Positions 45,258 through 59,800 of a stretch of 64,000 nucleotides of DNA are shown one piece after another. Source of the DNA: Anolis carolinensis. Its lineage: Eukaryota. Each line of letters begins with the position of its first letter. The stretch's first letter is position 1. The position numbers and the translations under genes are program-made. The DNA is taken from positions 30,418,782 through 30,482,781 of the forward strand of contig NC_085842.1 of the NCBI RefSeq assembly GCF_035594765.1, written 5' to 3'. The notes under the pieces were generated by a model. The model did not search any database. It was given only the letters and a program-made list of their open reading frames with translations, and had not been told where the DNA came from.

Positions 45258-48200
45258 TCCTAACAAGGCCAGAACCTCAGAAGATAAATGACATAAGGCT
45301 AGGGAGTTAAACAGGAAAGGAAAGGGTAATAGAAAGCTTACCTGTGTGTATTGGGTGATAGATGATACCTGTGTAGGGGCAGACAAACTGTTCCAGGAGC
45401 TTCACATTCTGTGAGATGAAAAGGGAAACCAGATGTTTACATTTCACAAATCAAAGGAGGACTAATGAAACATTCAACCTACTTCAGACAACCCCTTTTT
45501 ATGCCTTCAACAGGTCAGGAAATTACAAAATAGGAACATTGTGCAATGGTCACAAAGTATGGAACATCCTCCATGGAGAATTTTACTGTTCCTTCCTAAA
45601 CAGCTCTTAAATTCCTAGCCAGATATCTTCCAGAAGACTTTAGGGCACTTTCTTTCTTTTCCTCATCTTCCCCTGTTGTCCTGAACTAACAGAACTGCTT
45701 AATAATTTCAATGCACCATTCCCAAAAATTCAGTTGGCTTTCATACAGTTTTTAATATGTTTCTTCAAGTTGCAAGGATTCAATACCTGAATAAGAAAAT
45801 CTTGTTCTTCTTACCCTATAATCCAGAAAAAGGTTTTGGTCTCTGCAGATGGGACAGGGGTTCCCACACACATGCTTCCCTCTCTAAAGGAATACAATGT
45901 TGTTGAATGTCAGTTTCTCAGTTTAACACCATTAAACAAATACAAGACTTGTTGTAAATGTATCAAAAGGCAGGAATTGCAGCTCTTTTTTTTTTACATA
46001 AACAACATCATTACTGTGCATTAAAGTTCCATTATTTTGATTTCCATCAGGACAAGTCAAAACATAGGTGTTTCCCTCTACCAATTTAAAGCAGACTAGA
46101 AAAAGTGAAAAGCAACAAAAAGATACCAAGTCTGATTGACAATGCTAGGTCCATCAACTACTAACATAGCTTTCTGGGCCACACTTGCTTGTTCAAATAT
46201 AAAATACAGGAGAATATTCAGCATTCTTCCCAGTTGCCCCTCCCAGCTCTATTGTGTCTCATTTCCATATTTCCAAACCAACTTGAGGACAGATTGATTT
46301 TTAAACAAAGACAAAGAAAAATCATTATGCCATCTTGACTTCTCAAGATGAGGCAAACTAAAGAAAATATTAACACCTCTTTCACAATCCCGTAACTTCT
46401 GGCACTCACAATGCAAGTCTTCCGTGTCTTCTGTGGAGGAATTGGGCCCTTGTGATTACGTCTGTAGCCAAACCAGACAGGATTGCTGCCATATCGTTCT
46501 ATGTATTCTAAATGGACAAGATAGAAAGAGACACAGTCATTCACAGTAATACCGGTAGTTTACCAGTGATATTCAAAATATACAATTGCTTTAATTCCAA
46601 CTGTTCGCTCAAAGCTAAGTAACTATTTCATACACACATGCCAGACATTGTAAATCACATGCTAATTTGACAGAAGCAAGGTTTAATCCAAGCCACACTT
46701 GCTTGTAAAAAAGACAAACTGATCCCAATGGGATCTACTCTTTAGTAGGTATGCCCAGCTTAAATACCAGTACCTCCAAATCCACCAGATCCTGTCTGAT
46801 CTTGGAAGCTAAGCAGGGTCAGTGCTGGTTAGTACTTGGATGGGATCTGGCCAATGAACACCAGATACTGTGTGCTATATTTTGGAGGAAGGAACCGGCA
46901 AAATCACATTGCCTAAGAAAATCCTATAAAATCATGGTGTTACTGTAAATCAACAGGTGACATGAAGGCACAGACACATAAGTATCCCTCCATCTTGACA
47001 TTCAGAAAGAGAGTGAAAATGTGGCTTTGGGATCAAGCCTTCAGAGAATAATGATAGTGCAATAGATGGATTTGGAATTATGTGCAATGACTACTGGAAT
47101 GGCCTGGCTTACAATTGCGAATAGCATGGTTTTAATAGTGACTGTAATGTTTTTAAATGTTTTAATGTATTTTAATTTTAATGTTTATTTAATTGTACAT
47201 TGTCCTTAAGGCATTGAATTGTGGCCTATGTGTAAGCCACCTTGAGTCCCCTTCGGGGTTGAGAAGGGCGGGATATATAGTAAATAATAAATAAGTGCAC
47301 TGCAAGGCAAGTTATAATTTTTCCAAGAACAAGAACAAAGGACTTCTTACCCAATTTCAGCTGTTAGAATGAAGACAATTCAGGGAAACCCATACAGGTT
47401 TTTGTAAGAATGTACTGCAAGTTCAGTCGAGTTGTAAGAATAAAAACAAAATCCTGTGTCTAAAATGAATATGCTTTCATTCTAAGTATATATCCTTTGC
47501 GTTTCTGTGTCTCCTGCAATTGGTTGGTGCTGGGGTTGGTTCTTTTAAAAGAACTGGGAGATGTAGGTGCTCTGTAAATCTGTCCACCCTGGCTTACTCA
47601 GAGAGGATGGGAGAAAAGAGCTGGCGTGAGCTAGATCACTTTTAACATTCATTTTAAACAAAGTAGGCTTGCTATCTACACATCTACGACTACTTTTTGA
47701 ATCTCAAATTCCTTGTTTTTCAATAGAATGTTGTTGTTAGTCATTTACAAGTTCAACACAACTTGCTCCAACAAAAAATTGCATAACATTACAGGCTTTA
47801 TCTTTAAAGCTCCCTGGCGCTTTTACGCCCCCCCCCCTCCTAATTCTTATCAGTTCCTGCCTGTAACATTGTCTGCTTCAATCCCAACTGTCCCACTTTT
47901 CACATTTTCCCTGCTATTACCTATGACTTCAACTCTCATCACAGTGCATATTTCCACCAAATCTATTAATGAAACCTATAGCCACTGGAGATTATAATTT
48001 TAGTCAAACTCTGCCTACGACAGACTCTACTGCAGACCATGTACATGATCAGACTATTTGTTCATCTTTAGCCTATGTTGTCCTTACCTAACCCTTACTC
48101 CTCTCCACCCCCACCATTATCTCCTTCACTGCTTAAATTTAGACAGTAAGCTCTCACGAGGGCAGGGATTCAGCTCTCAAATACTCTTTTGCATGCCTGT

Positions 48201-51200
48201 GCTTGTGTAAAGCCTCATGTAAACTAGCCTTCCTTAGCAAAGTTATCCCTAGCTATGTTAGATCACACCTCCTAACATCCTCAGTTTGCATGGGAATATG
48301 TTTCTAAACTGAAAACAAATTAAACAAAACACACAAAAGATATATCATTCTCTTTCACAAACACAAATGCGTTTAGCTGTTCCCCAGATACCTTCACTCT
48401 CCAAGTACTCCCAAGGCTTGTCTTTAAAACGTGATTCTGTGTCAAAACCAACTGGTTCTGTGGATTCATCTTGGCTTACTTCTGTGCTATAAAGGTGAAC
48501 AGCCAATTGCTTGGGTAGCAGGAGACAAGAGCAAGTTATCTTCTAAGGGAAGGCAAAGCAAAGCAAGACAAGCATTAAAGGCTGATATTAGAAATGTAGC
48601 ACTGGAGCACACCTTGTATTGCAAGGAGGACAAATAAATCAGTTGTAAAGCAAATCAAGTTTGAACTCTTCCTAGAAACCATGATGACTAAATTGAGTCT
48701 GTCATACTTTGGACATGTTCCGAGAAGGCATGACTCATTAGAAAAGACAATAGTGTTTGGTAAAGTAAAAAGCAGTAGGAAAAGAGGAAGACTGCATTCC
48801 AGGAGGATAAACTACATGAAGAATGCTATGGCCCTGAATCGGCAAAACCTGAGCAAGTGATTGACGATAGTGGAACTTTGACGTCCCTCATGCGGGTTCA
48901 CCATATGTCAGAGTTCACTTGAAGGTAATTAACAACAATCAAAATGACCAGCAAAGAGTTACCAGAGCTCTAGCAAATTAGAGCAAAGTTTTTAAACATT
49001 AGTTTCATTAAAGACATATTATATGTTGCATGGCAAATAATTTCCTCTAACTTTTCAATATGACAAAATGCAACAAAAGTATTGTATTTTATCCTCTAAA
49101 CTAGTGGAAAAACATTTTCAGTTTACCTGTTTTACTAACAGCAAGCTACAGATATAATTTTGCCACCTTATAGAGGTTATTAAAATAGTGAAGTTGATTT
49201 TGCATTGCACATTCTACTTGAGCCCTCCATCTTATTGTCGCCATTAATTTAACTAAACCTGATCTGACACTAACTATGGCTGGCTTTCAACTAAGGGCTT
49301 AGGCTTCTTTGCAAAATGTGATCAGCTTTACTGCAGACTTACCACTTAAACCATAGTAACACAGGGAAAAGAAGGGAAAGAATGAAAAACCCTGACTGTA
49401 TGTAAGCTTACATTAGCCTAAAAAAGCATTTTTGCTTCCATTTGCTTTACTACCACTCAGAGTGGAAGTAATTGGTGTGAACGAGAGCCCAACAAAATCT
49501 GAAGGGCCACAGATTCTAGCCTGCAGTTATTGGTTTTTTTCTTTGTCACTGCTTCATGCTTTTGGCCCTGACCTTTTATCTCCATAAAAAATCTAACCAA
49601 AATGAGTGGGAAAGGAAGAAGCACCACCCATTTAAATTGCCAACTTTTTAAAAATGGCAGAATGTTTTTACTGACTTTATGTAAACTTCTCTGGGAGGTT
49701 CTATTGGTTGGAGAGTGAGACAAAAACATTTCAGATCCATGCATTTACATTGTGCTAATAGTGTCATCACTCTTAACACTAACATAACTGAAAGATCAAA
49801 AATTAGTCTTCTGATACTTTAATAGACATTGTCATCTTTTAATCAAATAGGCTTCAGATGGTGCATGAACTTGATCTAAAAATGAAACATACAAGCCCCA
49901 TTTTGTTGCTGTGCTATAATGCTTCACTGTGTGTTCTACAGGTTGAGCAACCTTATCCGGAGTTCTAAAATCAGAAAAACTCCAAAATTGTTTGCTTTCT
50001 GACAGTTCAATGGACACAAATGTCATCCTGTGCATGCAAATATACAATTACCTTCAGGATATGTGTATTAAGTATACATGAAAAAATTAATATCATATCC
50101 AGATATTAGTAGTGCAGCGGAATAAACCGCTGAGATGCTGACCGAAAGGGCAGTGGTTTGAATCCGGGGAGCGGAGTGAGCTCCTGCTGTTAGCCCCAGC
50201 TCCTGCCAACCTAGCAGTTCGAAAATATGCAAATGTGAGTAGATCAATAGGTACCACTCCAGCGGGAAGGTAACGGTACTCAACGCAGTCATGTCAGGCA
50301 CATGACCCTGGAAACATCTACGAACAAAGCCAGCTCTTCGGCTTAGAATTGTAGATGAGCACCAACCCCCAGTCAGACATGTCTAGAGTTAAAGTCAGGG
50401 AGAAATCTTTGCCTTTCCCTACAGTAACATATTAAATATAATACTACTGATAATATATAATGATATCCTGTTTTATTATTATATATTTGTATATTTTAAG
50501 TTGTAATGTTTTTGATTGTGAGTCACTTTGACTCTTTGAATGGAGAGATAAAGAGGGATAAAAATAAATAAATATGGTTGCCATAAGTTGGAAATGGCTT
50601 AAAGCAGTAGTTCTCAACCTGTGGGTCCCCAGATGTTTAGGCTTTCAACTCGCATAAATCCTAAGAAAAAAGGTAAAGGTTTCCCCTGACGTTAAGCCCA
50701 GTCATGTCTGACTCTGGGGGTTGGTGCCCATTTCCATTTCTAAGCCGAAGAGCCTTGGAGGTGTCCATAGACACCTCCAAGGTCATGTGGCCGGCATGAC
50801 TGCATGGAGCGCCGTTACCTTCCCGCCAGAGCGGTACCTATTGATCTACTCACATTGGCATGTTTTCGAACTGCTAGGTTGGCAGAAGCTGGAGCTAACA
50901 GCGGGCACTCATTCTGCTCCTGGGATTTGAACCTGCGACCTTTCGGTCTGCAAGTTCAGCAGCTCAGTGCTTTAACACACTTCACCATCGGGGCTCCCTT
51001 ACCCATAAATCCTAACATTTGGTAAATTGACTGGGGTTTCTGGAAGTTGTAGGCCAAAACACAGGTTGAGAAGCACTGCCTTAAAGGCACACAAGAAAAC
51101 CTGGCTGAATATGCTGAATTTTGGTTTTGTCAAGAAAGCCCAACAAATTCTACACTGTTATGACAACAATGAGGCTAAAGTCCTTTCCTAATTCTGCCAC

Positions 51201-51548
51201 CTGCATTCATGTATCCTAGAATTAGACGAGATCGCTTAAGCGGCTGAGGGGGAAAAGAAAGGGGCCTGAGGCTATTAGGAATTGTGGGAGTTGGGAGTCC
51301 AAAACATCTGGAGGACCCAAGTTTGCCCAGGCCTGACATACACACAGAGAAACAAATCTAGGAGGCGTGAGTCTCTCGCTCTCCCTCTTTCTACTATCAA
51401 TAACAAGTTCGGCCTCTTCCTAAGCGATAATTCTGCTAAATGCGGAGCCCTCCCTCACCTGGACTCCGAAAGGCTTTCGGAGAGCCGCCCGGAGCGCCAC
51501 ACGGCCTGCCGCCCGACACACAAGCGAGGCGCCTATGGAGGCCGCCAT
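41913..51548 (-). CDS. MRPS18B: 28S ribosomal protein S18b, mitochondrial (mS40); 7 exons, 249 aa
   Basis: Exons 90+151+98+69+67+60+215 = 750 nt in frame; motifs [50 protein letters not shown]. Confidence 0.96.
42613..42943. mobile_element. Tc1/mariner MITE
   Basis: TIR cagtagagtcttgcttatccaac / gttggataagcaagactctactg, TA flanks. Confidence 0.85.
44498..44557 (-). CDS. MRPS18B: MRPS18B exon 6
   Basis: [20 protein letters not shown], 60 nt, AG/GT. Confidence 0.94.
45342..45408 (-). CDS. MRPS18B: MRPS18B exon 5
   Basis: [22 protein letters not shown], 67 nt. Confidence 0.94.
45815..45883 (-). CDS. MRPS18B: MRPS18B exon 4
   Basis: [23 protein letters not shown], 69 nt. Confidence 0.94.
46410..46507 (-). 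CDS. MRPS18B: MRPS18B exon 3
   Basis: [33 protein letters not shown], 98 nt. Confidence 0.95.
46780..46978 (+). mobile_element. 5S rRNA-derived SINE (5S-Sauria-like)
   Basis: gtctgatcttggaagctaagcagggtc...tggttagtacttggatggga matches the 5S A/IE/C boxes; followed by an RTE-like tail gaaggcacagacaca. Confidence 0.75.
48392..48542 (-). CDS. MRPS18B: MRPS18B exon 2
   Basis: ...[15 protein letters not shown], 151 nt, cccttag acceptor, gtatct donor. Confidence 0.88.
50105..50420 (+). mobile_element. Sauria SINE
   Basis: gaccgaaagg...gcaaatgtgagtagatcaataggtacc...tcaggggagaaatcttt. Confidence 0.85.
50670..50998 (-). mobile_element. Sauria SINE inserted in hAT MITE 50605-51078
   Basis: Flanking repeat cataaatcctaa; the host MITE has a 7/8 TSD (gcttaaag / ccttaaag). 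Confidence 0.85.
51459..51548 (-). CDS. MRPS18B: MRPS18B exon 1 (mitochondrial presequence [30 protein letters not shown])
   Basis: aagATGg, Arg/Ala-rich with no acidic residues, donor cag|gtgagg. Confidence 0.92.
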
Positions 51549-51600
51549 CTTGGGCCGCAATTACTTTACGCATGCGCCCTGAGTCGCCCCTCGAGCCTCA
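51540..51600 (-). promoter_or_regulatory. MRPS18B promoter (YY1 site overlapping the ATG; NRF1 site)
   Basis: aagatggcggc and cgcatgcgc within a small CpG island. Confidence 0.65.
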
Positions 51601-51689
51601 AGATCCTCTCGTTGAGTTCCCTTCCTTCCTTCCCTGGGAAACTCGAAAGTTATCACAATGAAAATAGAAAATAATAATAAAAATAAATA

Positions 51690-51997
51690 CAGTAGAGTCT
51701 CACTTATCCAACACTCGCTTATCCAACGTTCTGGTTTATCCAACGCATTTTTGTAGTCAATGTTTTCAATACATCGTGATATTTTGGTGCTAAATTCGTA
51801 AATACAGTAATTACAACATAGCATTGCTGCATATTGAACTCCTTTTTCTGTCAAATTTGTTGTATAACATGATGTTTTGGTGCTTAATTTGTAAAATCAT
51901 AACCTATTTTGATCTTTAATAGACTTCTCCTTAATCTCTCCTTATTATCCAACATATTCACTTATCCAACGTTCTGCCGGCCCGTGAGACTCTACTG
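51690..51997. mobile_element. Tc1/mariner MITE with right TIR hit by a hAT insertion
   Basis: Left TIR cagtagagtctcacttatcc; right end gtgagactctactg, with its last 8 bp duplicated at 52694-52701 then TA. Confidence 0.8.
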
Positions 51998-52693
51998 CAG
52001 GGGTCCCCAAACTAAGGCCTGGGGACTGGATGCGGCCCTCCAAGGTCATTTACCTGGCCCCCGCCCTCAGTTTTATAATATAATCTTTTTATATCATTTT
52101 TAATAATATAATATATTGTATTTACATATAATACTGATATTAATATTATAATGTTGTACAATATAATACAAATAATAATACCATATAATAATATTATGTT
52201 ATTACATATAATATTACAGTATAGTAGTATAGTTCAATATAGTAATATATACTGCTAATATTGTGAAATGCTAATAATATAATATATTCTATGTACATAC
52301 AGCTGCTCTGAGTCCCCTTCGGGGCGAGAAGAGTGGGATATAAATGTAATAAATAAATGTAGTAGATGAGTAAATAAATAATTTTAGACTTAGGCTCGCC
52401 CAAAGTCTGAAATGACTTGAAGGCACACAACAACAATCCTAACTTGACTATCTCATTGGCCAGAAGCAGGCCCACACTTCCCATTGAAATCCTGATAGGT
52501 TTATGTTGGTTACAGTTGTTTTCATTTTTAAATATAGCATTCTTTCATTGTTGTTGTTGTTTTGCACTACAAATAAGACATGTGCAGTGTGCATAGGAAT
52601 TTGTTCAGTTTTTTTTCCAAATGATAATTTGGCCCCTCCACAGTCTGAAAGATTGTGGACCGGCCCTCTGCTTTAAAAGTTTGGGGACCCCTG
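51998..52693. mobile_element. Non-autonomous hAT element carrying an L2-like tail fragment
   Basis: 16-bp perfect TIR caggggtccccaaact / agtttggggacccctg; 8-bp TSD ctctactg. Confidence 0.88.
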
Positions 52694-53026
52694 CTCTACT
52701 GTAATAAATTAATAGTAATATTACAAAAATTACGACAGAAACTTAAATAAAATAAAAATAAATAAGAAAATAATAACAATATGACCAAAATTACAATTGA
52801 AACTTAAAAAGTGACCACAATAATAAAATAAAAATAAAATATTAATTAAATTCTGGATAAATAAAATAATACATAAAAATATAAACAGCAATATATCATT
52901 AAATAAAACGATCAATAAATAAAAAATCACAATAGAAATTTGTACAAAGTGCAGGCAAGTACTCAATTGCTTCCTAAATGGGATCAGTGCATGACTGCTC
53001 AAAGATCTGACATAAAAATTGTTATA

Positions 53027-53352
53027 CAGTAGTCTCATGTATCCAACATAAATGGGCCAGCAGAACGTTGGATAAACGAAAATGTTGGATAATAAGGAGG
53101 AATTAAGGAAAAGCCTATTAAATGTCAAATTACATTATGATTTTACAAATTAAGCACCCAAACATCATGTTTTACAACAAATTGACAGAAAAAGCAGTTT
53201 AATATACGGTAACGTATATTACTGTATTTACGAATTTAGCACCAAAACATCACAAAACATTGACTACAAAAACATTGACTACTAAAAGGCAGACTGCATT
53301 GGATAATCCAGAACGTTGGATAAGCGAATGTTGGATAAGTGAGACTCTACTG
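53027..53352. mobile_element. Tc1/mariner MITE (opposite orientation to 51690)
   Basis: TIRs and TA flanks as in the other copies. Confidence 0.8.
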
Positions 53353-53399
53353 TAATACAAATAGCAATATAATTGATCAAATAATTTATTTTATTGTGT

Positions 53400-53640
53400 C
53401 AAAAGCAACTTGAGAACATACTCCAAGTCACTTCTGATGTGAGAGAATTGGCCATCTACAGGGACGTTGCCCAGGGGACGCCAGGATGCGTTACTGGGAG
53501 GCTTCTCTCATGTCACCACAAGCTGGAGCTGACAGACGGGATCTCACCCTGTCTCGCAGATTCAAAACGGCAACCTTCAGGTCAGCAACCCAACCTTCAC
53601 GTCAGCAGTTCACAAAGGTTTGACCCATTACACCACCACG
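53400..53640 (-). mobile_element. Sauria-related SINE
   Basis: Reverse complement of the family at 3015-3280. Confidence 0.7.
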
Positions 53641-54087
53641 GATATAATAAATTTATGTTATAAATATAAATAAAAATTACAATAGAAACTTGTACAAAGT
53701 ACAAACAAGTACCCAGCTGCTTCCTAAATGGGATCAGTGTATGACTGCTTAAGGATTTGACATTGTTATTTCACGTGGAATGCATAGCCAATTTATTATT
53801 GTAACATTCTTCAACATAAATGTGTACTTCTCTCGATTTCAGATAATAATGTTTATTTATATCCCTCCTTCTCTCCCCATACAGAGACTCAAAGCGGCTC
53901 ACAATGAAAAGCATGGCAATACAACTTAAAATATATAATATACAAATATTAAAACAGTATTAAACACCATTAATATTAAAAACAATTCAAGTTGAAACCA
54001 TAATCGCCATAACCATAAGGTATTATAGGGTATGTGTGCATTTTAGGAGAAACCCTGTATTTGTATAAATCACAAGAAATGCTATTG

Positions 54088-54828
54088 TATGGGTTGCTGT
54101 GAGTTTTCTGGGCTGTATGGCCAAGTTCCAAATAGGAGAGGCATGGGCAAACTTCGGCCTTCTAGGTGCTTTGGATTACAACTGCCACAATTCCTAACAG
54201 CCTATCGGCTATGAATGTTGCAGTTGGCCACCTTGATTGGCATTGAATGACCTTGCAGCTTCAAAATCTGGCTGCTTCCTGCCTGGGGGAATCCACCGTT
54301 GGGAGGTGTTAGCTGGCCCTGATTGTTTCCTGTCAGGAATCCCCTTTGTTTTTTAGTTTTGTTCTTTATTTACTGTCCTGATTTTAGAGTTTTTAAATAC
54401 TGGTAGCCAGTTTTTGTTCATTTTCATGGTTTCCTCCTTTCTGTTGAAATTGTCCACATGCTTGTGGATTTCAATGGCTTCTCTGTTTAGTCTGACATGA
54501 TGGTTGTTAGAGTGGTCCAGCATTTCTGTGTTCTCAAATAATATACCATGTCTAGGTTGGTTCATCAAGTGCTCTGCTATGGCTGACTTCTCTGGTTGAG
54601 TTAGTCTGCAGTGCCTTTTATGTTCCTTGATTCGTGTCTGAGCAATGCTGTGTTTGGTGGTCCCTATGTAGACTTGTCCACAGCTGCATGGTATACGGTA
54701 GACTTCTGCAGAGGTGAGAGGATCGCTCTTGTCTTTTGCTGAACGTAGCATTTGCTGGATTTTTTTTAGTGGGTCTGTAGTTTGTAGGTTGTGTTTTTTC
54801 ATCAGCTTACCTATGCGGTCAGTGGCAG
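54088..54828 (-). mobile_element. Penelope (Poseidon-type) 3' fragment: GIY-YIG endonuclease and pLTR end, interrupted by half a hAT MITE
   Basis: ORF 54353-54802: VYRIPCSCGQVYIGTT, RIKEHKR, SAIAEH, REAIEI, NFNR. Confidence 0.9.
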
Positions 54829-55224
54829 ATCCGACATTGTTATTTCAGGTGGAATTCATAGCCAATTTAATTATTATTGTAACATTCTTCAACAGAAATG
54901 TATTTATTTCAATTTTGGATAATAATAATTATGTTTATTTATACCCCACTTTTTCTCTCAATACGGAGACTCAAAGGAGCTCACAATTAAAAGCATTGCA
55001 ATCGAACTTAAAATATATAGTATGCAAATATTAAACAGTATTAAACATCATTATTAAAAACAATTCAAGTTAAAACCATAATCACCATAACCATAAGGTG
55101 TTATAGGGTGTGTGTGTATTTTAGGAGAAACCCTGTATTTATATAAACCACAAGAACTGCCATTCATGCCGAAAAACAAAAGCTTAATTTATTTAAATAC
55201 ATAGCATCCTTTTAGCCTGGAAAG

Positions 55225-55760
55225 GTCACGCATGCGCACGACGCTCCTCGGAGCAAACTGCGCCACCAGCTTCTCGAGCCAAGAGCTGCCTTTACTGCGC
55301 ATGGGCACAAGTATGCATGTTGTGATGACTTTCTCAATTCTCCCCACCTCCCTTTCCAGATTCCGCGCATGCTCAGTTCGGGGCGTCTTTGTTGCCCTCT
55401 CATGCTAGGGCGGTGGCTGCGCGCGTGCACGCACGCCGCCAACGTCCTTCTTCGTGTCCGCCAAGGGTGAGCGCATGTGCGCATGCGCACGAGAGTCTAC
55501 TAACTGCGTCACAACCTTTTCCAGCGTTAAAATTAATTTTGGTGGGCACCGTTGGATAAAATTTCAAAAGACGATTCTGCCGGTGTGCTTCGATATAAAT
55601 TTTGATGCGGATTTCGACCACTGGGATGATGACGTGAAAGGTGGGCGGGGCCTCGAGGCTTTGTTCTGGAGCCGCAGCGCGCGACGAAGGGCGGGGGGAC
55701 TCGGAGGAGGGAGGGGCCGGGTATAAAAGGCGGTGCGCGCGCACCCACCGGCCATTCTGG
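55225..55760 (+). promoter_or_regulatory. CpG-island promoter with NRF1 cluster, CRE-like site, GC box and TATA box (probable PPP1R10 promoter)
   Basis: Five GCGCATGCGC-like sites 55229-55489, gatgacgtga ~55628, gggcgggg 55643, TATAAAA 55722, initiator-like gccatt ~30 nt downstream. Confidence 0.8.
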
Positions 55761-55773
55761 GGTCTGTGTAAAG
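55750..55773 (+). other. PPP1R10: Short non-coding exon 1 of divergent gene (probable PPP1R10/PNUTS)
   Basis: Strong donor aag|gtgagt 50 nt after the TATA box. Identity is inferred from the head-to-head PPP1R10/MRPS18B arrangement in mammals; no coding exon is in the window. Confidence 0.55.
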
Positions 55774-56169
55774 GTGAGTACTGTGTCTCTGCGAGCGTTA
55801 TTTTTGGGAGCGGTTTGGGAGGGGACCAAAGGTTATTGGTATTGGGTTACTACTATTTTTGTTACCCTCTTCCTGGAATATGTCACCATTGACATTTCTA
55901 ACTCCTAAGTAATAAATATTTCGACGAATTGCTCTTTTGAGAGCATTATTTCTCTTAGAAATAATAGAAACCAATAAGAAGTGAGCTGTTAATTTAAAAT
56001 TTAAGTTCAGAATTCCCCCCAAAATTGAAATCCTGTGATTTGTGTCTGGTCAGTCGGCCAGGGTTTCTTGTTACATACGATTATATAGCTCTTTTATTTC
56101 CTTAGATTTTGGCTTTGTTTCATTAACCAAAAAATCTTAACCGTGCTTTATCTTTCTTTACCTTCCTAG

Positions 56170-56846
56170 GTTTCCTAGGTCTCGAGAAACTGTTCAACGT
56201 GCGCCGCGAAACAAAGAAACCCCCCCACAGTTGAGCCTCTGAGACGACACACAAAGCCAGCTCTGTTTCCGATCGTCTGTATTGGGACCCACCCAGCGGA
56301 GAACAACTACCATTCAAAAACATAAAAAAAATCAAATTTATATTTAGGAACAACTTTCCCTGATTTTTTTTATCATGCAACTTTTTGTGACTCATTGACC
56401 ATCAAAAGGTTGCCTTTTTTTAAACAAACCGAAAATGAGCTATACCAAATTTACTTTTTTTCTTTAAAAAACACAGCTTAATCCAAAACTAAACCTTGAG
56501 GTGCTGCCGAAGAGAAAATTAATTGGATAGTAAGTGTCGCATTTTCAACCAACTGACCAAAAAACAGTCGTCCGTGTCGAAGTGAGCTAACGGCACGAAG
56601 AAAAGACCAAAAAATGAAGGGGAAAAGTGGGTTTTATTTGAGGCGTTAACCCTTTGCATACTCCAAAATGCATATTTATATAAGGAGTATGATGGTCTCT
56701 TAGAAAATCCATCGACTCCAGGATTGTCAAGGGTTAATGAGCTCCCACATAACAGATGGTGGTGACTGAGCCATAAAGTGCTGCTTCTTTGTGTGGGAGA
56801 CGTGGAAATAGAGCTAAATAAGCAATCTGTACATAAAGATTGCAGG
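56170..56846 (+). other. PPP1R10: Probable long non-coding exon 2 (5' UTR) of PPP1R10, structured, with short uORFs
   Basis: Branch-like cttaac, pyrimidine tract, tandem acceptors cctag|gtttcctag|g (56170/56179). Best donor is cagg|gtaaga at 56846, alternative ata|gtaagt at 56529; the 3' boundary is uncertain. Confidence 0.45.
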
Positions 56847-59800
56847 GTAAGAGCGGAAGGAACAAAGCTATAACTGGGTAGTGGCCAGTGATAAATCAAT
56901 TTAATTGGATGAATTTGTCATAGTCTTCAATATTTTTAAATTTGTTAAAAATTGGGTTGTGTTTCTTTAAAAAAAATTGACGCTTATATAATGTATGTGT
57001 AGGTATGTAATACTGGAAAAAGTAACTGGCAATCTACAAATAAAGATTGCAAAATGGCTTGGGGGATTCATTTAAAAACTAATCCAGTATGTATTTTTTT
57101 AAAAACTTGTTAATAGGGAGCAGGAATCTCTATAGGGCTCAAAATGAGGTCTAGCGTGCTTATAATGTTGTAGCTACCTATATTCCCCCACCCCAGTGCA
57201 ATATGGCGGTATTTTCTCTTTTGTCCCTGACAAATGGCATTGTACCTTTCCTTTACAGGATGTTTCCCTTTTTATTTTATCCTACCTCCCCCATGTGTGG
57301 AGGGAGAAGAAAAGGGTGGGGGGGGGTGATGGTATTAACCCTGCAATGATCAGTAATGAGGTTTGACTCCGGCACTTGCTGGATCATAACTTGCCACCCA
57401 AACTGTTAAATAGGTTCTAGTTTATAGAACTGACATAAAATGATTCAGGTGGTGTATGTGATGGAGGTTGTATTGCTGTAGTTTCTTCTTAATAGATTCT
57501 GAAGCCTTTGCTTTATTTTTTCCCCCTAATTGTCTGTGCTCTTAAAATGGCGTCTCTGCCTCTTTCCTTCTCCAAGAGCCCACAAGGCTTTCTGGGCAGG
57601 GAGCTGATGTAAGCAGCTTGCAACAAACTCCTCCCCCTGAATAGCTTGTGCTTGGCACCCAAGCGGGCAGTCATGGAAAGGAGGGGGGGGGGGAAGTGGC
57701 TTACCCTTCCGCCTTGCAACCTTTTCCACAAGGATCTAACCAAATTCCACTCCCGTTTCCTCTATAGGAAATTTAGGTTACAGCTTGAGCAGTGCAAAGT
57801 ATGATCATAAATCCGCCGAGTTTCTCTTTTTTTAGGTTTCAGCATCACACAAGACCTTCGGATTTCAGTGCTTGCTCCATGTTTGCTGTGCTTTGTTGAG
57901 ACAAATCTGTTAAGTGTTACTATCAGAAAGGCAACTGTTTTGTATCCTCTTCTCTCCCCTTCCCCCATCCCCTTGCCCTGTTTTCATCTTCTGGGTCTCT
58001 TTGAAGGAATGGAGCAGGGGAGCATGTTTCTTAATTGAATCAGATCTAATTGTTGACATGAAATGCTACCACTGGACCCCAGATATTTAGCCAGTGTCAG
58101 TGACACTTGCTAAAACTAACAAGGTTCTGTATGGGGGATCTTGGCATTTTCTCTGTCCACATGTACACCAAAGGGGGTGGGTGGGAAGGGGGGAGTCTTG
58201 TATTAATTTGCCACATTCCACCGTTCCTGTACAATGTACTAGGAAAGAAGTGATCATTAGGAAAAAGGGAATCCAGCACTTGTATTACTTCATCAAAGGG
58301 AGGGGAACAGCCACAATTCCACCTGGTAAGCAAAACCTTTCTGGTATTAATTACATCTCACAACCTTCATTTCTGTTCCAGACCACTTTGTTCATTTTTA
58401 ATTTTTTTTTTTGCTGCTGTTCTCTTCCATTGTCAATACCCTAAAGTGACACCTACTGATGCATGCAGGCTGTTAAGGGTATTAGTATTTTTGCCAATCT
58501 GTTGAGGACATTAGTGTTTTCCAAGCTGGTTAATTCCTTAAAACAGGATTCTGATTCCTTGAATGGTTCTGCATGAACATCAACTAGCATTTCAGTAATG
58601 CTGCCCTTGAGACTTCTGCATTAAGAGTGAATGCTGTGAAGGGAATGTTCCACAAAGTGAAACTGAAATATCTTTGTCTCCGGTGGTAGCATTTCATATT
58701 GTAAGTCCCAAACCCACAACCTGATGACACTGTTCTGGCTTTTTAACCAATTGAATGCACCTGCCATTTCACACAACATTGCAGGGTGCTTTAGTCAGGA
58801 CAATGCTGTGTCTTTATTGGGTTGAATAGAATGAGAATGTAAAATTGTAAATGTCCATTTAATCCTACACTTGGATGACCATGCACCTGTTGTAGTCAGA
58901 TTTGCCTTTCAATAGGAAAACACTGATAAAGTGGGTTTTTAAAAAAAAAATACAACAGTCACATGATATCTGGGAATATTTATGCAGCAAAAATGGAAGC
59001 TGCCAAAATGGCATTTAAAATAAATATAGGTTGGGATAGAGGTTCACATTTCCATAAATGCACACTAATAATTTCTGTTACATCCATTAGAAAATGCTTA
59101 GAAACCCAACAGCTAAGGTCTTGTGTTTTAGGGGATTCAGTTTTGAGATAGCAAGCAACTGCCTAGCTGATAAGTTACCCAGCACTAAAGCAGGCAAATC
59201 CAGTAGATCCTAAGATTCCCTTTAAAACCATTGTTCAAAACATTCCTTTTTAGGAAAAAAAAACAGTGTTAGGAATGCTGGTTTACATAAGATTCCAAAA
59301 CAATTCTGGAAGCCTTACAAGAACTACTGCCCAGTTAAATAGTTCTATAGATATACTTCCACTGTCTCCAACACTGGTCTTTTTCCTCATGATTTGACTC
59401 CTGCCAGATGTTATAGTTACATTGTTATGTCAGCCAGTAATTTGATGAGGCAATGAAATGTCACAAGACTAGGGTAGCTGGTTGAGATTGTCTTGTGTAT
59501 ATGTGCAATGTAAAAACATGCAGCTGGAACCAGTCCTCTTAAGATTTCCCAATAAGACAAATTCTCATCCTTCAATAGCTGCTGAAGAAAGTGGGTGGAT
59601 TCTCCTTTACCCTAAATTTGAATCATGATAGTTCAACCTGCAATCTCATCCCTTGCATACTGAACACTTAAGGGGAGAGCTATCCCTGTATCCAAAAATA
59701 ACTGCTCTTCATTCTATATTGACAAAGAATAGTCTGCATTCCTGAACATACTTAACAGGAAACACTGAGGCCTAATTTTCATGTAAGTGTAACAAAAATT

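What the first reader, a model, noticed from the sequence alone, without database searches (positions are those of the whole stretch)
56568..56843. Four-way-junction RNA and a run of hairpins at the 3' end of the putative 5' UTR exon
Seen: closing stem cguuaacccuu/aaggguuaaug (56644-56654/56729-56739) encloses cauacucc/ggaguaug (56657-64/56684-91), gaugg/ccauc (56691-95/56709-13) and a short gac/guc arm (56714-28). It is flanked by hairpins ucguccgu/acgg-c-acga (56568-56598), cucccacaua/ugugugggag (56742-56799) and gcaaucu/agauugc (56822-56843). Mismatches are G-U on the plus strand. Inference: a compact structured cis-element (translation control, protein-binding platform or processed ncRNA) that I cannot assign to a known family.
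Basis: partly seen in the sequence, partly recalled or inferred. Interest (0 to 1): 0.75.

Follow-up and report, generated by a model that had tools for sequence, protein, structure and literature searches.

The report
Conserved RNA hairpins in PPP1R10 leader
The flagged stretch is a real, strand-specific set of RNA stems kept for over 300 million years in the non-coding leader of the lizard gene for PNUTS, but it most likely lies just inside an intron rather than at the end of an exon, and only part of the proposed four-way junction is conserved.

Summary
The stems are at the stated coordinates. The plus strand folds better than shuffles (z -3.5; minus strand -1.6).

I fetched the orthologous locus from 10 other tetrapods through the neighbouring gene MRPS18B: five squamates, a turtle, a bird, a koala, a frog and a caecilian.

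- **Hairpin 56742-56799:** present in all 11 species with significant covariation (92% of cells paired, 9 pairs with compensatory double changes, 0 of 500 shuffles as good).
- **Closing stem 56644-54/56729-39:** invariant in eight amniotes. A helix keeps its place in the caecilian and the frog, with different letters.
- **Arm gaugg/ccauc:** conserved.
- **Arm cauacucc/ggaguaug:** Anolis-specific. It follows an 11-13-nt deletion, has pair probability 0.003, and competes with a conserved GGAG/CUCC extension.
- **Hairpin 56568-98:** squamates only.
- **Hairpin 56822-43:** letter-identical in all 10 orthologues, so its pairing cannot be tested. A second copy carrying AAUAAA lies at 57029-57050.

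A TATA box, a tiny exon 1, an exon 2 (56170-56529) and a donor GUAAGU at 56530 are conserved across tetrapods. The element therefore sits at +39 to +314 of the 5'-UTR intron.

Rfam and the paper library gave nothing.

Best reading: a cis-acting pre-mRNA processing module. The scan had already noted a neighbouring conserved stem in this leader.

The parts
55722..55729 (+). TATA box of the PPP1R10 promoter (context)
   Evidence: TATAAAAG, conserved in squamates, koala, frog and caecilian in the 11-species alignment
55750..55773 (+). Putative tiny non-coding exon 1, ending at the conserved donor AAAG|GUGAGUAC (GU at 55774). The start is inferred from the TATA distance only.
   Evidence: Donor conserved in squamates, turtle, koala, frog and caecilian. 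The TSS was not measured.
56170..56529 (+). Putative non-coding exon 2 (360 nt) of the PPP1R10 5' UTR
   Evidence: Polypyrimidine tract plus AG acceptor at 56168-69 and donor at 56530, both conserved across tetrapods. Inferred from conservation, not from reads.
56530..56556 (+). Conserved 5' splice site GUAAGUGU followed by a conserved U-rich tract. This is the deepest-conserved block next to the finding.
   Evidence: Same letters in all 11 species. BLAST block 56483-56556 is 85% identical to the bird and 84% to the koala.
56568..56598 (+). Hairpin 1 (ucguccgu / acgg-c-acga)
   Evidence: In the MFE. 84% of cells paired in 7 sauropsids, with one compensatory G-C to A-U in the gecko; broken in the turtle and absent deeper.
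56644..56654 (+). P1 closing stem, 5' arm
   Evidence: Pair probability 0.999. The 10-nt core is identical in 8 amniotes including the koala.
56729..56739 (+). P1 closing stem, 3' arm, directly abutting the invariant AUGAGC linker and hairpin 3
   Evidence: In the caecilian it is replaced by AAAUCC/GGAUUU, in the frog by a different 14-bp hairpin at the same place, and in the bird it is weakened.
56684..56719 (+). Conserved arm B: GGAG..GAUGG / CCAUC..CUCC
   Evidence: Probability about 0.99 in Anolis. 98.6% of cells paired in 7 sauropsids, with 8 of 10 pairs invariant.
56657..56664 (+).
   Evidence: Lies at an Anolis-only 11-13-nt deletion that removed the 5' half of hairpin A (GCAUUUU/AAAAUGC) of the other squamates. 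Pair probability 0.003.
56742..56799 (+). Hairpin 3: a 23-bp interrupted hairpin, the best-supported element
   Evidence: Folds alike in 11 species taken singly. 92.3% of cells paired, 9 pairs with double changes, 0/500 shuffles, slid controls 39-59%. z -2.9 to -5.5 on the sense strand against -1.4 to -2.5 antisense.
56822..56843 (+). Hairpin 4: 7-bp stem and 8-nt loop holding CAUAAA.
   Evidence: The orthologous 22-mer is letter-identical in all 10 other species, so its pairing cannot be tested by covariation.
57029..57050 (+). Hairpin 5: a second copy of hairpin 4 with the same stem. The 5' half of the loop is free to vary and the 3' half is fixed. It carries AAUAAA at 57039-44.
   Evidence: Present 150-270 nt downstream of hairpin 4 in all 11 species. 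It is the first canonical poly(A) hexamer after the exon 2 donor in Anolis.

Best explanation
The stretch is the 5' part of an ancient, strand-specific structured RNA module in the pre-mRNA of PPP1R10 (PNUTS, the PP1-targeting subunit that slows RNA polymerase II for termination). It begins 39 nt downstream of the conserved donor of non-coding exon 2.

The module has three parts:
- a closing helix P1 around a variable multi-branch domain;
- an invariant AUGAGC linker, then a long hairpin (H3);
- about 20 nt further on, an invariant short hairpin (H4), repeated about 190 nt downstream (H5) with a canonical AAUAAA in its loop.

Shown here: orthology, deep conservation, strand asymmetry and covariation of H3, and the conserved splice signals that place the module in the intron.

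Inferred: the module acts in cis on processing of the 5'-UTR intron. It would set how efficiently the exon 2 donor is used, as against retention or read-through of the intron and 3'-end formation at the hairpin-held poly(A) signal. It would do this by folding the first 300-500 nt of the intron into a compact platform that presents fixed loop and linker letters to one or more RNA-binding proteins.
For: Identity of the gene:
- MRPS18B exons lie on the - strand of the window.
- In the orthologous loci MRPS18B is flanked head-to-head by a gene with the Med26/TFIIS-N domain.
- The bird locus holds the first coding exon with a PNUTS-like N-terminus, recognised from memory of the human protein.

Conservation:
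- 56129-56814 is 77-80% identical in five squamates and 74% in a turtle.
- 56729-56803 is still found in koala and caecilian.

H3:
- The same hairpin is the MFE in each of 11 species folded singly.
- In the basal 11-bp stem only 1 of 121 cells is broken.
- Pair types switch C-G/A-U (koala, caecilian), A-U/G-U/G-C (turtle, bird) and A-U/C-G (frog).
- All five covariation measures beat 500 of 500 shuffles and every slid control.
- The sense strand is 6-10 kcal/mol more stable than the antisense.

P1:
- The arms are invariant in 8 amniotes, while the koala's enclosed 100 nt cannot be aligned with the sauropsids'.
- In the caecilian and the frog a helix of different sequence ends at the same place, just before AUGAGC.

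Intron placement.

H4/H5: invariant stem and AUAAAG in all species. In Anolis, UGUA motifs lie 33-47 nt upstream of the AAUAAA and a U-tract about 50 nt downstream.
Against: - None of the 18 runs that hold 55900-56900 is on record as RNA. Splice-site use, intron retention and any 3' end near 57060-57075 are therefore untested.
- Within sauropsids the structure shows no significant covariation (95.2% paired against 94.7% shuffled, 40/500). For P1, arm B, H4 and H5 the case rests on invariance, which sequence-specific protein or DNA binding would also explain.
- P1 is weakened in the bird, and the interior of the junction is not conserved. Anolis itself lost one arm.
- The U-rich downstream element expected of a poly(A) site is not evident in the koala or the frog.
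- The comparative set is only 11 species.
Confidence: 0.55

Rival explanations
1. One reading: the stretch is exonic. It is the 3' part of a long 5'-UTR exon ending at the GU after hairpin 4, and it controls translation as a structured leader, a uORF or an IRES-like platform.
For: - Anolis, Podarcis, Varanus, turtle and koala have GGGUAAG after hairpin 4, which could serve as an alternative donor.
- An invariant AUG (56737-39) opens a short ORF beginning Met-Ser-Ser-His in all 11 species.
- Runs hold 55900-56900 without a break.
Against: - The donor after hairpin 4 is not conserved: Sceloporus GGGCGAG, bird GGGGCGG, caecilian GGGCUAG. The donor at 56530 is invariant.
- The ORF varies from 10 to over 60 codons, with no conservation past about codon 8.
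- Its silent-looking changes are matched by changes in the 3' arm, which lies beyond the stop codon in most species.
- The AUG has a weak context (U at -3, A at +4).
Confidence: 0.15
2. The module is the body of a separate stable non-coding RNA. This could be a short isoform ending at the hairpin 5 poly(A) signal, or a stable intronic RNA. Its structure would serve the RNA's own stability or a function in trans.
For: - Conservation in the intron exceeds that of most of exon 2 between Anolis and the koala.
- A canonical AAUAAA sits in a conserved hairpin about 510 nt after the donor.
- Many small contig sets hold the whole unspliced 1 kb.
Against: - No read or 3'-end evidence.
- No Rfam family and no snoRNA or miRNA features. 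The interior of H3 is replaced in the bird.
- Conservation continues for a further 1.5 kb past hairpin 5, which a transcript ending there would not explain.
Confidence: 0.15
3. The conservation acts at the DNA level, as a promoter-proximal enhancer cluster. The invariant inverted repeats would be factor-binding palindromes, and the RNA folds would be incidental.
For: - P1, H4 and H5 are invariant on both arms, as paired half-sites would be.
- The region lies within 1.3 kb of the promoter, in a transposon-free block.
Against: - H3 changes its letters while keeping its pairs. It does so largely through G-U intermediates, which are mismatches on the other strand and in DNA.
- The caecilian and the frog keep a helix at the P1 position with different letters.
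- The AUAAAG half of the H4/H5 loops is asymmetric and always in the sense orientation.
Confidence: 0.1
4. Chance structure in neutrally evolving DNA.
For: The energy z-score without the last hairpin is only -2.5, against a background sd of 1.1.
Against: Orthologous conservation across tetrapods and significant covariation.
Confidence: 0.02

Closest known systems
MAT2A hairpins recognised by METTL16 (repeated conserved hairpins controlling intron detention)
   Same: Several vertebrate-conserved hairpins in the non-coding part of a regulator's own transcript. Stem and loop letters are fixed and present in more than one copy (H4, H5, and perhaps the tip of H3). The proposed output is the choice between productive splicing and a non-productive RNA. 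This comparison rests on my own knowledge of that system.
   Different: The UACAGAGAA loop motif is absent. The elements lie in a 5'-UTR intron, not a 3' UTR. No binding factor is known.
Poly(A) signals held in hairpins and silenced by a nearby U1 site (HIV-1 poly(A) hairpin; U1 'telescripting' control of premature cleavage and polyadenylation)
   Same: AAUAAA sits in the loop and 3' arm of a conserved hairpin a few hundred nt downstream of a strong, invariant 5' splice site.
   Different: Use of this site as a 3' end was not shown. The downstream U/GU-rich element is not conserved in the koala or the frog. The first copy (H4) carries the weaker variant CAUAAA.
Conserved long-range and local pre-mRNA structures that regulate splice-site choice
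   Same: Intronic position next to a regulated donor, strand specificity and compensatory changes.
   Different: No competing splice-site pairing was demonstrated here. The module does not sequester the 56530 donor in the predicted folds.
Rfam families (all 4227 models)
   Same: None.
   Different: No match at E <= 1 in 54000-59000 apart from a chance-level mir-1234 hit outside the element.

Membership tests
Any Rfam 15 family | Covariance-model score at or near the family's gathering threshold | tested here: not met
   cmscan with permissive filters over 54000-59000, both strands. The only hit was mir-1234 at 57674-57730: 25.8 bits against a gathering score of 70, E 0.46.
Evolutionarily conserved cis-regulatory RNA structure (generic class) | Orthologous conservation of the helices across distant species | tested here: met
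   H3 in 11 of 11 tetrapods. P1 in 8 amniotes, plus analogous helices in two amphibians. Arm B in 7 sauropsids.
Evolutionarily conserved cis-regulatory RNA structure (generic class) | Compensatory base changes above controls | tested here: met
   Met for H3 only: 9 pairs with double changes against 2.8 +/- 1.4 in shuffles, 0/500. Not met for the sauropsid-only alignment of the whole stretch (40/500).
Evolutionarily conserved cis-regulatory RNA structure (generic class) | Strand specificity | tested here: met
   z -3.47 (+) against -1.60 (-) for the stretch. H3 z -2.9 to -5.5 sense against -1.4 to -2.5 antisense. Many G-U pairs.
Evolutionarily conserved cis-regulatory RNA structure (generic class) | The stretch is transcribed on that strand | not testable with these tools
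No holder run is on record as RNA.
microRNA precursor (for H3) | About 22-nt mature arm conserved, loop free to vary | tested here: not met
   The upper two thirds of both arms are replaced in the bird and differ in the koala, frog and caecilian. Only the base is fixed. No Rfam miRNA hit.
C/D box snoRNA | RUGAUGA and CUGA boxes brought together by a terminal stem | tested here: not met
   No RUGAUGA in 56530-56814. The near-match AUGAUGG lies inside arm B and is not flanked by a terminal stem.
METTL16-type hairpin | UACAGAGAA in the loop | tested here: not met
   Motif absent from 56530-56814 and 56853-57200.
Functional intronic poly(A) site (for H5, context of the finding) | AAUAAA, upstream UGUA, downstream U/GU-rich element, and mapped 3' ends | tested here: inconclusive
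   AAUAAA is conserved in 10 of 11 species, with GAUAAA in the caecilian. UGUA and the U-tract are seen in squamates only. 3' ends could not be tested.

The most novel reading that the evidence does not exclude
The 5'-UTR intron of PPP1R10 carries a tetrapod-wide attenuator. Three hairpins (the tip of H3, H4 and H5) each present a poly(A)-signal-like (C/A)AUAAAG next to a CU/AG closing step, downstream of an invariant U1 site. Through them PNUTS-PP1, itself the factor that couples poly(A)-site recognition to polymerase slowing and termination, would sense its own activity. It would then divert its pre-mRNA to a short non-coding product.
Probability: 0.15. Interest if true: 0.8.

Novelty: new member of a known kind. 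Interest (0 to 1): 0.6.

Why it matters
PNUTS-PP1 is a central regulator of RNA polymerase II elongation and termination, yet the searched literature describes no control element in its own transcript.

This work defines a structured RNA module in its leader intron that can be tested directly. It is at least about 350 million years old, taking that as the age of the amniote-amphibian split. Several features are ready for compensatory-mutant minigenes and for a hunt for the binding protein:
- a covarying long hairpin;
- two letter-identical short hairpins;
- an invariant donor;
- a hairpin-held poly(A) signal.

It also corrects the local gene model: a tiny exon 1, a 360-nt exon 2, and the element inside the intron.

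Tried and rejected
- **Reads:** After that I sent no window letters from 56815-56852 to any search tool, and all queries stopped at 56814 or restarted at 56853. The script pattern for it was taken from the bird orthologue printed and from hairpin 5.
- **Run list:** 18 holders from 7 studies, many with small contig sets. None is on record as RNA, so I did not count them as evidence of expression.
- **Exact look-up of six spurious leader ORFs,** to trace transcriptome contigs: none in the collection.
- **Two of the 12 locus look-ups** (ostrich, possum) found no record.
- **Joined MRPS18B model:** not built. A single exon (window:46410-46514:-) was searched by reference, and a full-length protein returned by the tool was used from then on.
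- **Human sequence:** not fetched or compared.
- **Paper searches:** PPP1R10/PNUTS combined with ultraconserved, intron retention, detained intron, premature termination, intronic polyadenylation, conserved RNA structure and autoregulation gave nothing on this element.
- **Readings considered and rejected:** miRNA precursor, C/D snoRNA, K-turn in arm B, IRE, U1A box, METTL16 hairpin (and inspection).
- **Long-range helix 56541-47/56805-11:** this bracket around the whole module appears in the sauropsid consensus (86% paired). By eye I could not find it in the koala or the frog.

Full report
**Observation**

- The 276-nt stretch folds to -80.2 kcal/mol on the + strand, with z -3.47 and none of 200 dinucleotide shuffles as good.
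- The reverse complement gives z -1.60.
- The 106-nt core gives z -3.74.
- As a control I folded 74 windows of 247 nt from 40001-58247, both strands. The mean z was -0.26, sd 1.1, with one window at or below -3. The target cut at 56814 gave -2.5.

Energy alone therefore puts the stretch in the tail and no further. Rfam at E <= 1 over 54000-59000 gave only a chance-level mir-1234 hit outside the element.

**A constraint on the work**

No reads could be laid. 

The run search found 18 holders of 55900-56900 in 7 studies. Many are small contig sets, but none is on record as RNA, so I do not count this as expression.

**What gene this is**

Earlier notes of the scan call the genome green anole and the locus PPP1R10. 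I checked this.
- MRPS18B exons lie on the - strand at 51.5, 48.4, 46.4, 45.8 and 45.4 kb.
- One exon, searched by reference, led to full-length MRPS18B proteins. I built no joined exon model.
- Their genomic loci with 10-kb flanks were obtained for Sceloporus, Podarcis, Eublepharis, Pituophis, Varanus, Pelodiscus, Accipiter, Rhinatrema, koala and Bombina.
- In these loci a gene with the Med26/TFIIS-N domain lies head-to-head with MRPS18B.
- The bird locus holds a first coding exon that begins like PNUTS, as I recall the human protein.

**Conservation**

- Window 56129-56814 is 77-80% identical in all five squamates and 74% in the turtle. Similarity continues to about 58900.
- In the bird, koala, caecilian and frog, discrete blocks survive: 56483-56556, 56729-56803, 57027-57054 and 58200-58480.

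**Gene model**

An 11-species alignment shows these features:
- a TATA box at 55722-29;
- a tiny exon 1 ending at AAAG|GUGAGUAC (GU at 55774);
- a polypyrimidine tract and AG acceptor, with exon 2 starting at 56170;
- an invariant donor GGAUA|GUAAGUGU (GU at 56530), followed by a conserved U-rich tract.

It is GC in the snake and is lost in Sceloporus, the bird and the caecilian. The finding is therefore most likely +39 to +314 of the 5'-UTR intron. This rests on conservation of the signals, not on reads.

**Hairpin 3 (56742-56799)**

- Each of the 11 species, folded alone, gives the same long hairpin.
- On the alignment, 92.3% of 209 cells pair and 9 of 21 pairs show changes on both sides.
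- All five covariation measures exceed 500 of 500 shuffles. Slid controls pair at 39-59%.
- In the 11-bp base only 1 of 121 cells is broken.
- Pairs switch C-G/A-U (koala and caecilian, at least two events on any tree), A-U to G-U to G-C (turtle, bird) and A-U/C-G (frog).
- Sense-strand z-scores are -2.9 to -5.5, against -1.4 to -2.5 antisense.

This is a selected RNA helix on the PPP1R10 strand.

**The junction**

- The 10-nt core of the closing stem is identical in eight amniotes. The koala's enclosed sequence cannot be aligned with the sauropsids' yet still folds as a multi-branch.
- The bird has three changes in the arms: two give G-U and one breaks a pair. Its MFE drops the stem.
- In the caecilian the helix ending just before the invariant AUGAGC is AAAUCC/GGAUUU. 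In the frog it is a different 14-bp hairpin.
- Other squamates and the turtle have two inner arms, GCAUUUU/AAAAUGC and GGAG..GAUGG/CCAUC..CUCC.
- Anolis has an 11-13-nt deletion that removed half of the first of these arms.
It has pair probability 0.003 and competes with the conserved GGAG/CUCC, which has probability 0.99.
- Within sauropsids there is too little variation for covariation: 95.2% paired against 94.7% shuffled, 40/500.

**Hairpin 1**

It holds in squamates, with one compensatory change in the gecko and some breaks, and is lost in the turtle and beyond.

**Hairpins 4 and 5**

- The orthologue of hairpin 4 is letter-identical in all 10 other species.
- A second copy with the same 7-bp stem lies 150-270 nt downstream, at window 57029-57050.
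- In that copy the 5' half of the loop varies freely, while AUAAAG is fixed. This gives AAUAAA in 10 species and GAUAAA in the caecilian.
- In Anolis this is the first canonical poly(A) hexamer after the exon 2 donor. It has UGUA motifs 33-47 nt upstream and a U-tract about 50 nt downstream. Those flanks are conserved only in squamates.
- The tip of hairpin 3 has a similar CU-loop-AUAA-AG shape in squamates, the turtle and the frog.

**Interpretation**

Shown: an ancient, strand-specific structured RNA module in the PPP1R10 leader.

Inferred: it acts in cis on the pre-mRNA. It would balance use of the exon 2 donor against retention or read-through and 3'-end formation at the hairpin-held signal, probably through proteins that read the fixed loops and linker. 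Because PNUTS-PP1 itself couples poly(A)-site passage to termination, a feedback loop is an attractive but untested extension.

Rivals:
- an exonic translation-control element;
- a separate short or intronic non-coding RNA;
- DNA-level enhancer palindromes;
- chance.

The last is excluded for hairpin 3. The DNA reading is disfavoured by the G-U-mediated changes.

**Novelty**

Seven literature searches found nothing on this element, and it matches no Rfam family. It is a new member of a known kind, conserved cis-acting pre-mRNA structures. The scan had already noted a neighbouring conserved long-range stem in the same intron.

Noticed in passing
window 57029-57050: Second copy of the hairpin 4 motif (same 7-bp stem, loop ending AUAA) carrying a canonical AAUAAA. 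Present in all 11 tetrapods, with only the 5' half of the loop varying.
   Followed up: partly
window 55722-56537: Conserved promoter and leader gene model: TATA box, an exon 1 of about 20-25 nt with donor at 55774, intron 1, and exon 2 at 56170-56529 with donor at 56530 followed by a U-rich tract.
   Followed up: partly
window 56654-56660: An Anolis-specific 11-13-nt deletion removes the 5' half of a hairpin (GCAUUUU/AAAAUGC) that the other five squamates keep. The interior of the junction therefore tolerates loss of an arm.
   Followed up: yes
window 56737-56769: An invariant AUG just before hairpin 3 opens a short ORF starting Met-Ser-Ser-His in all 11 species. Its length runs from 10 to over 60 codons and the tail is not conserved. 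The letters are more likely kept for the helix than for a peptide.
   Followed up: partly
L007:8448-8520 (- strand): In the bird the interior of the junction is short and holds GUGGGAGCU. This can pair with the 5' arm of hairpin 3 in place of its normal partner, giving a possible alternative fold in the MFE.
   Followed up: no
window 45340-51560 (- strand): MRPS18B exons, with the start codon near 51545. About 4 kb of repeat-rich sequence separates it from the PPP1R10 promoter in Anolis, against 0.5-0.9 kb in the other species.
   Followed up: partly
window 54353-54802 (- strand): A 149-aa ORF that looks like the GIY-YIG endonuclease of a Penelope-type element. A LINE reverse-transcriptase-like ORF run lies at 35403-36542. 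Both were judged by eye only.
   Followed up: no
window 57674-57730: Weak mir-1234 covariance-model hit (25.8 bits against a gathering score of 70, E 0.46). Taken as chance.
   Followed up: no
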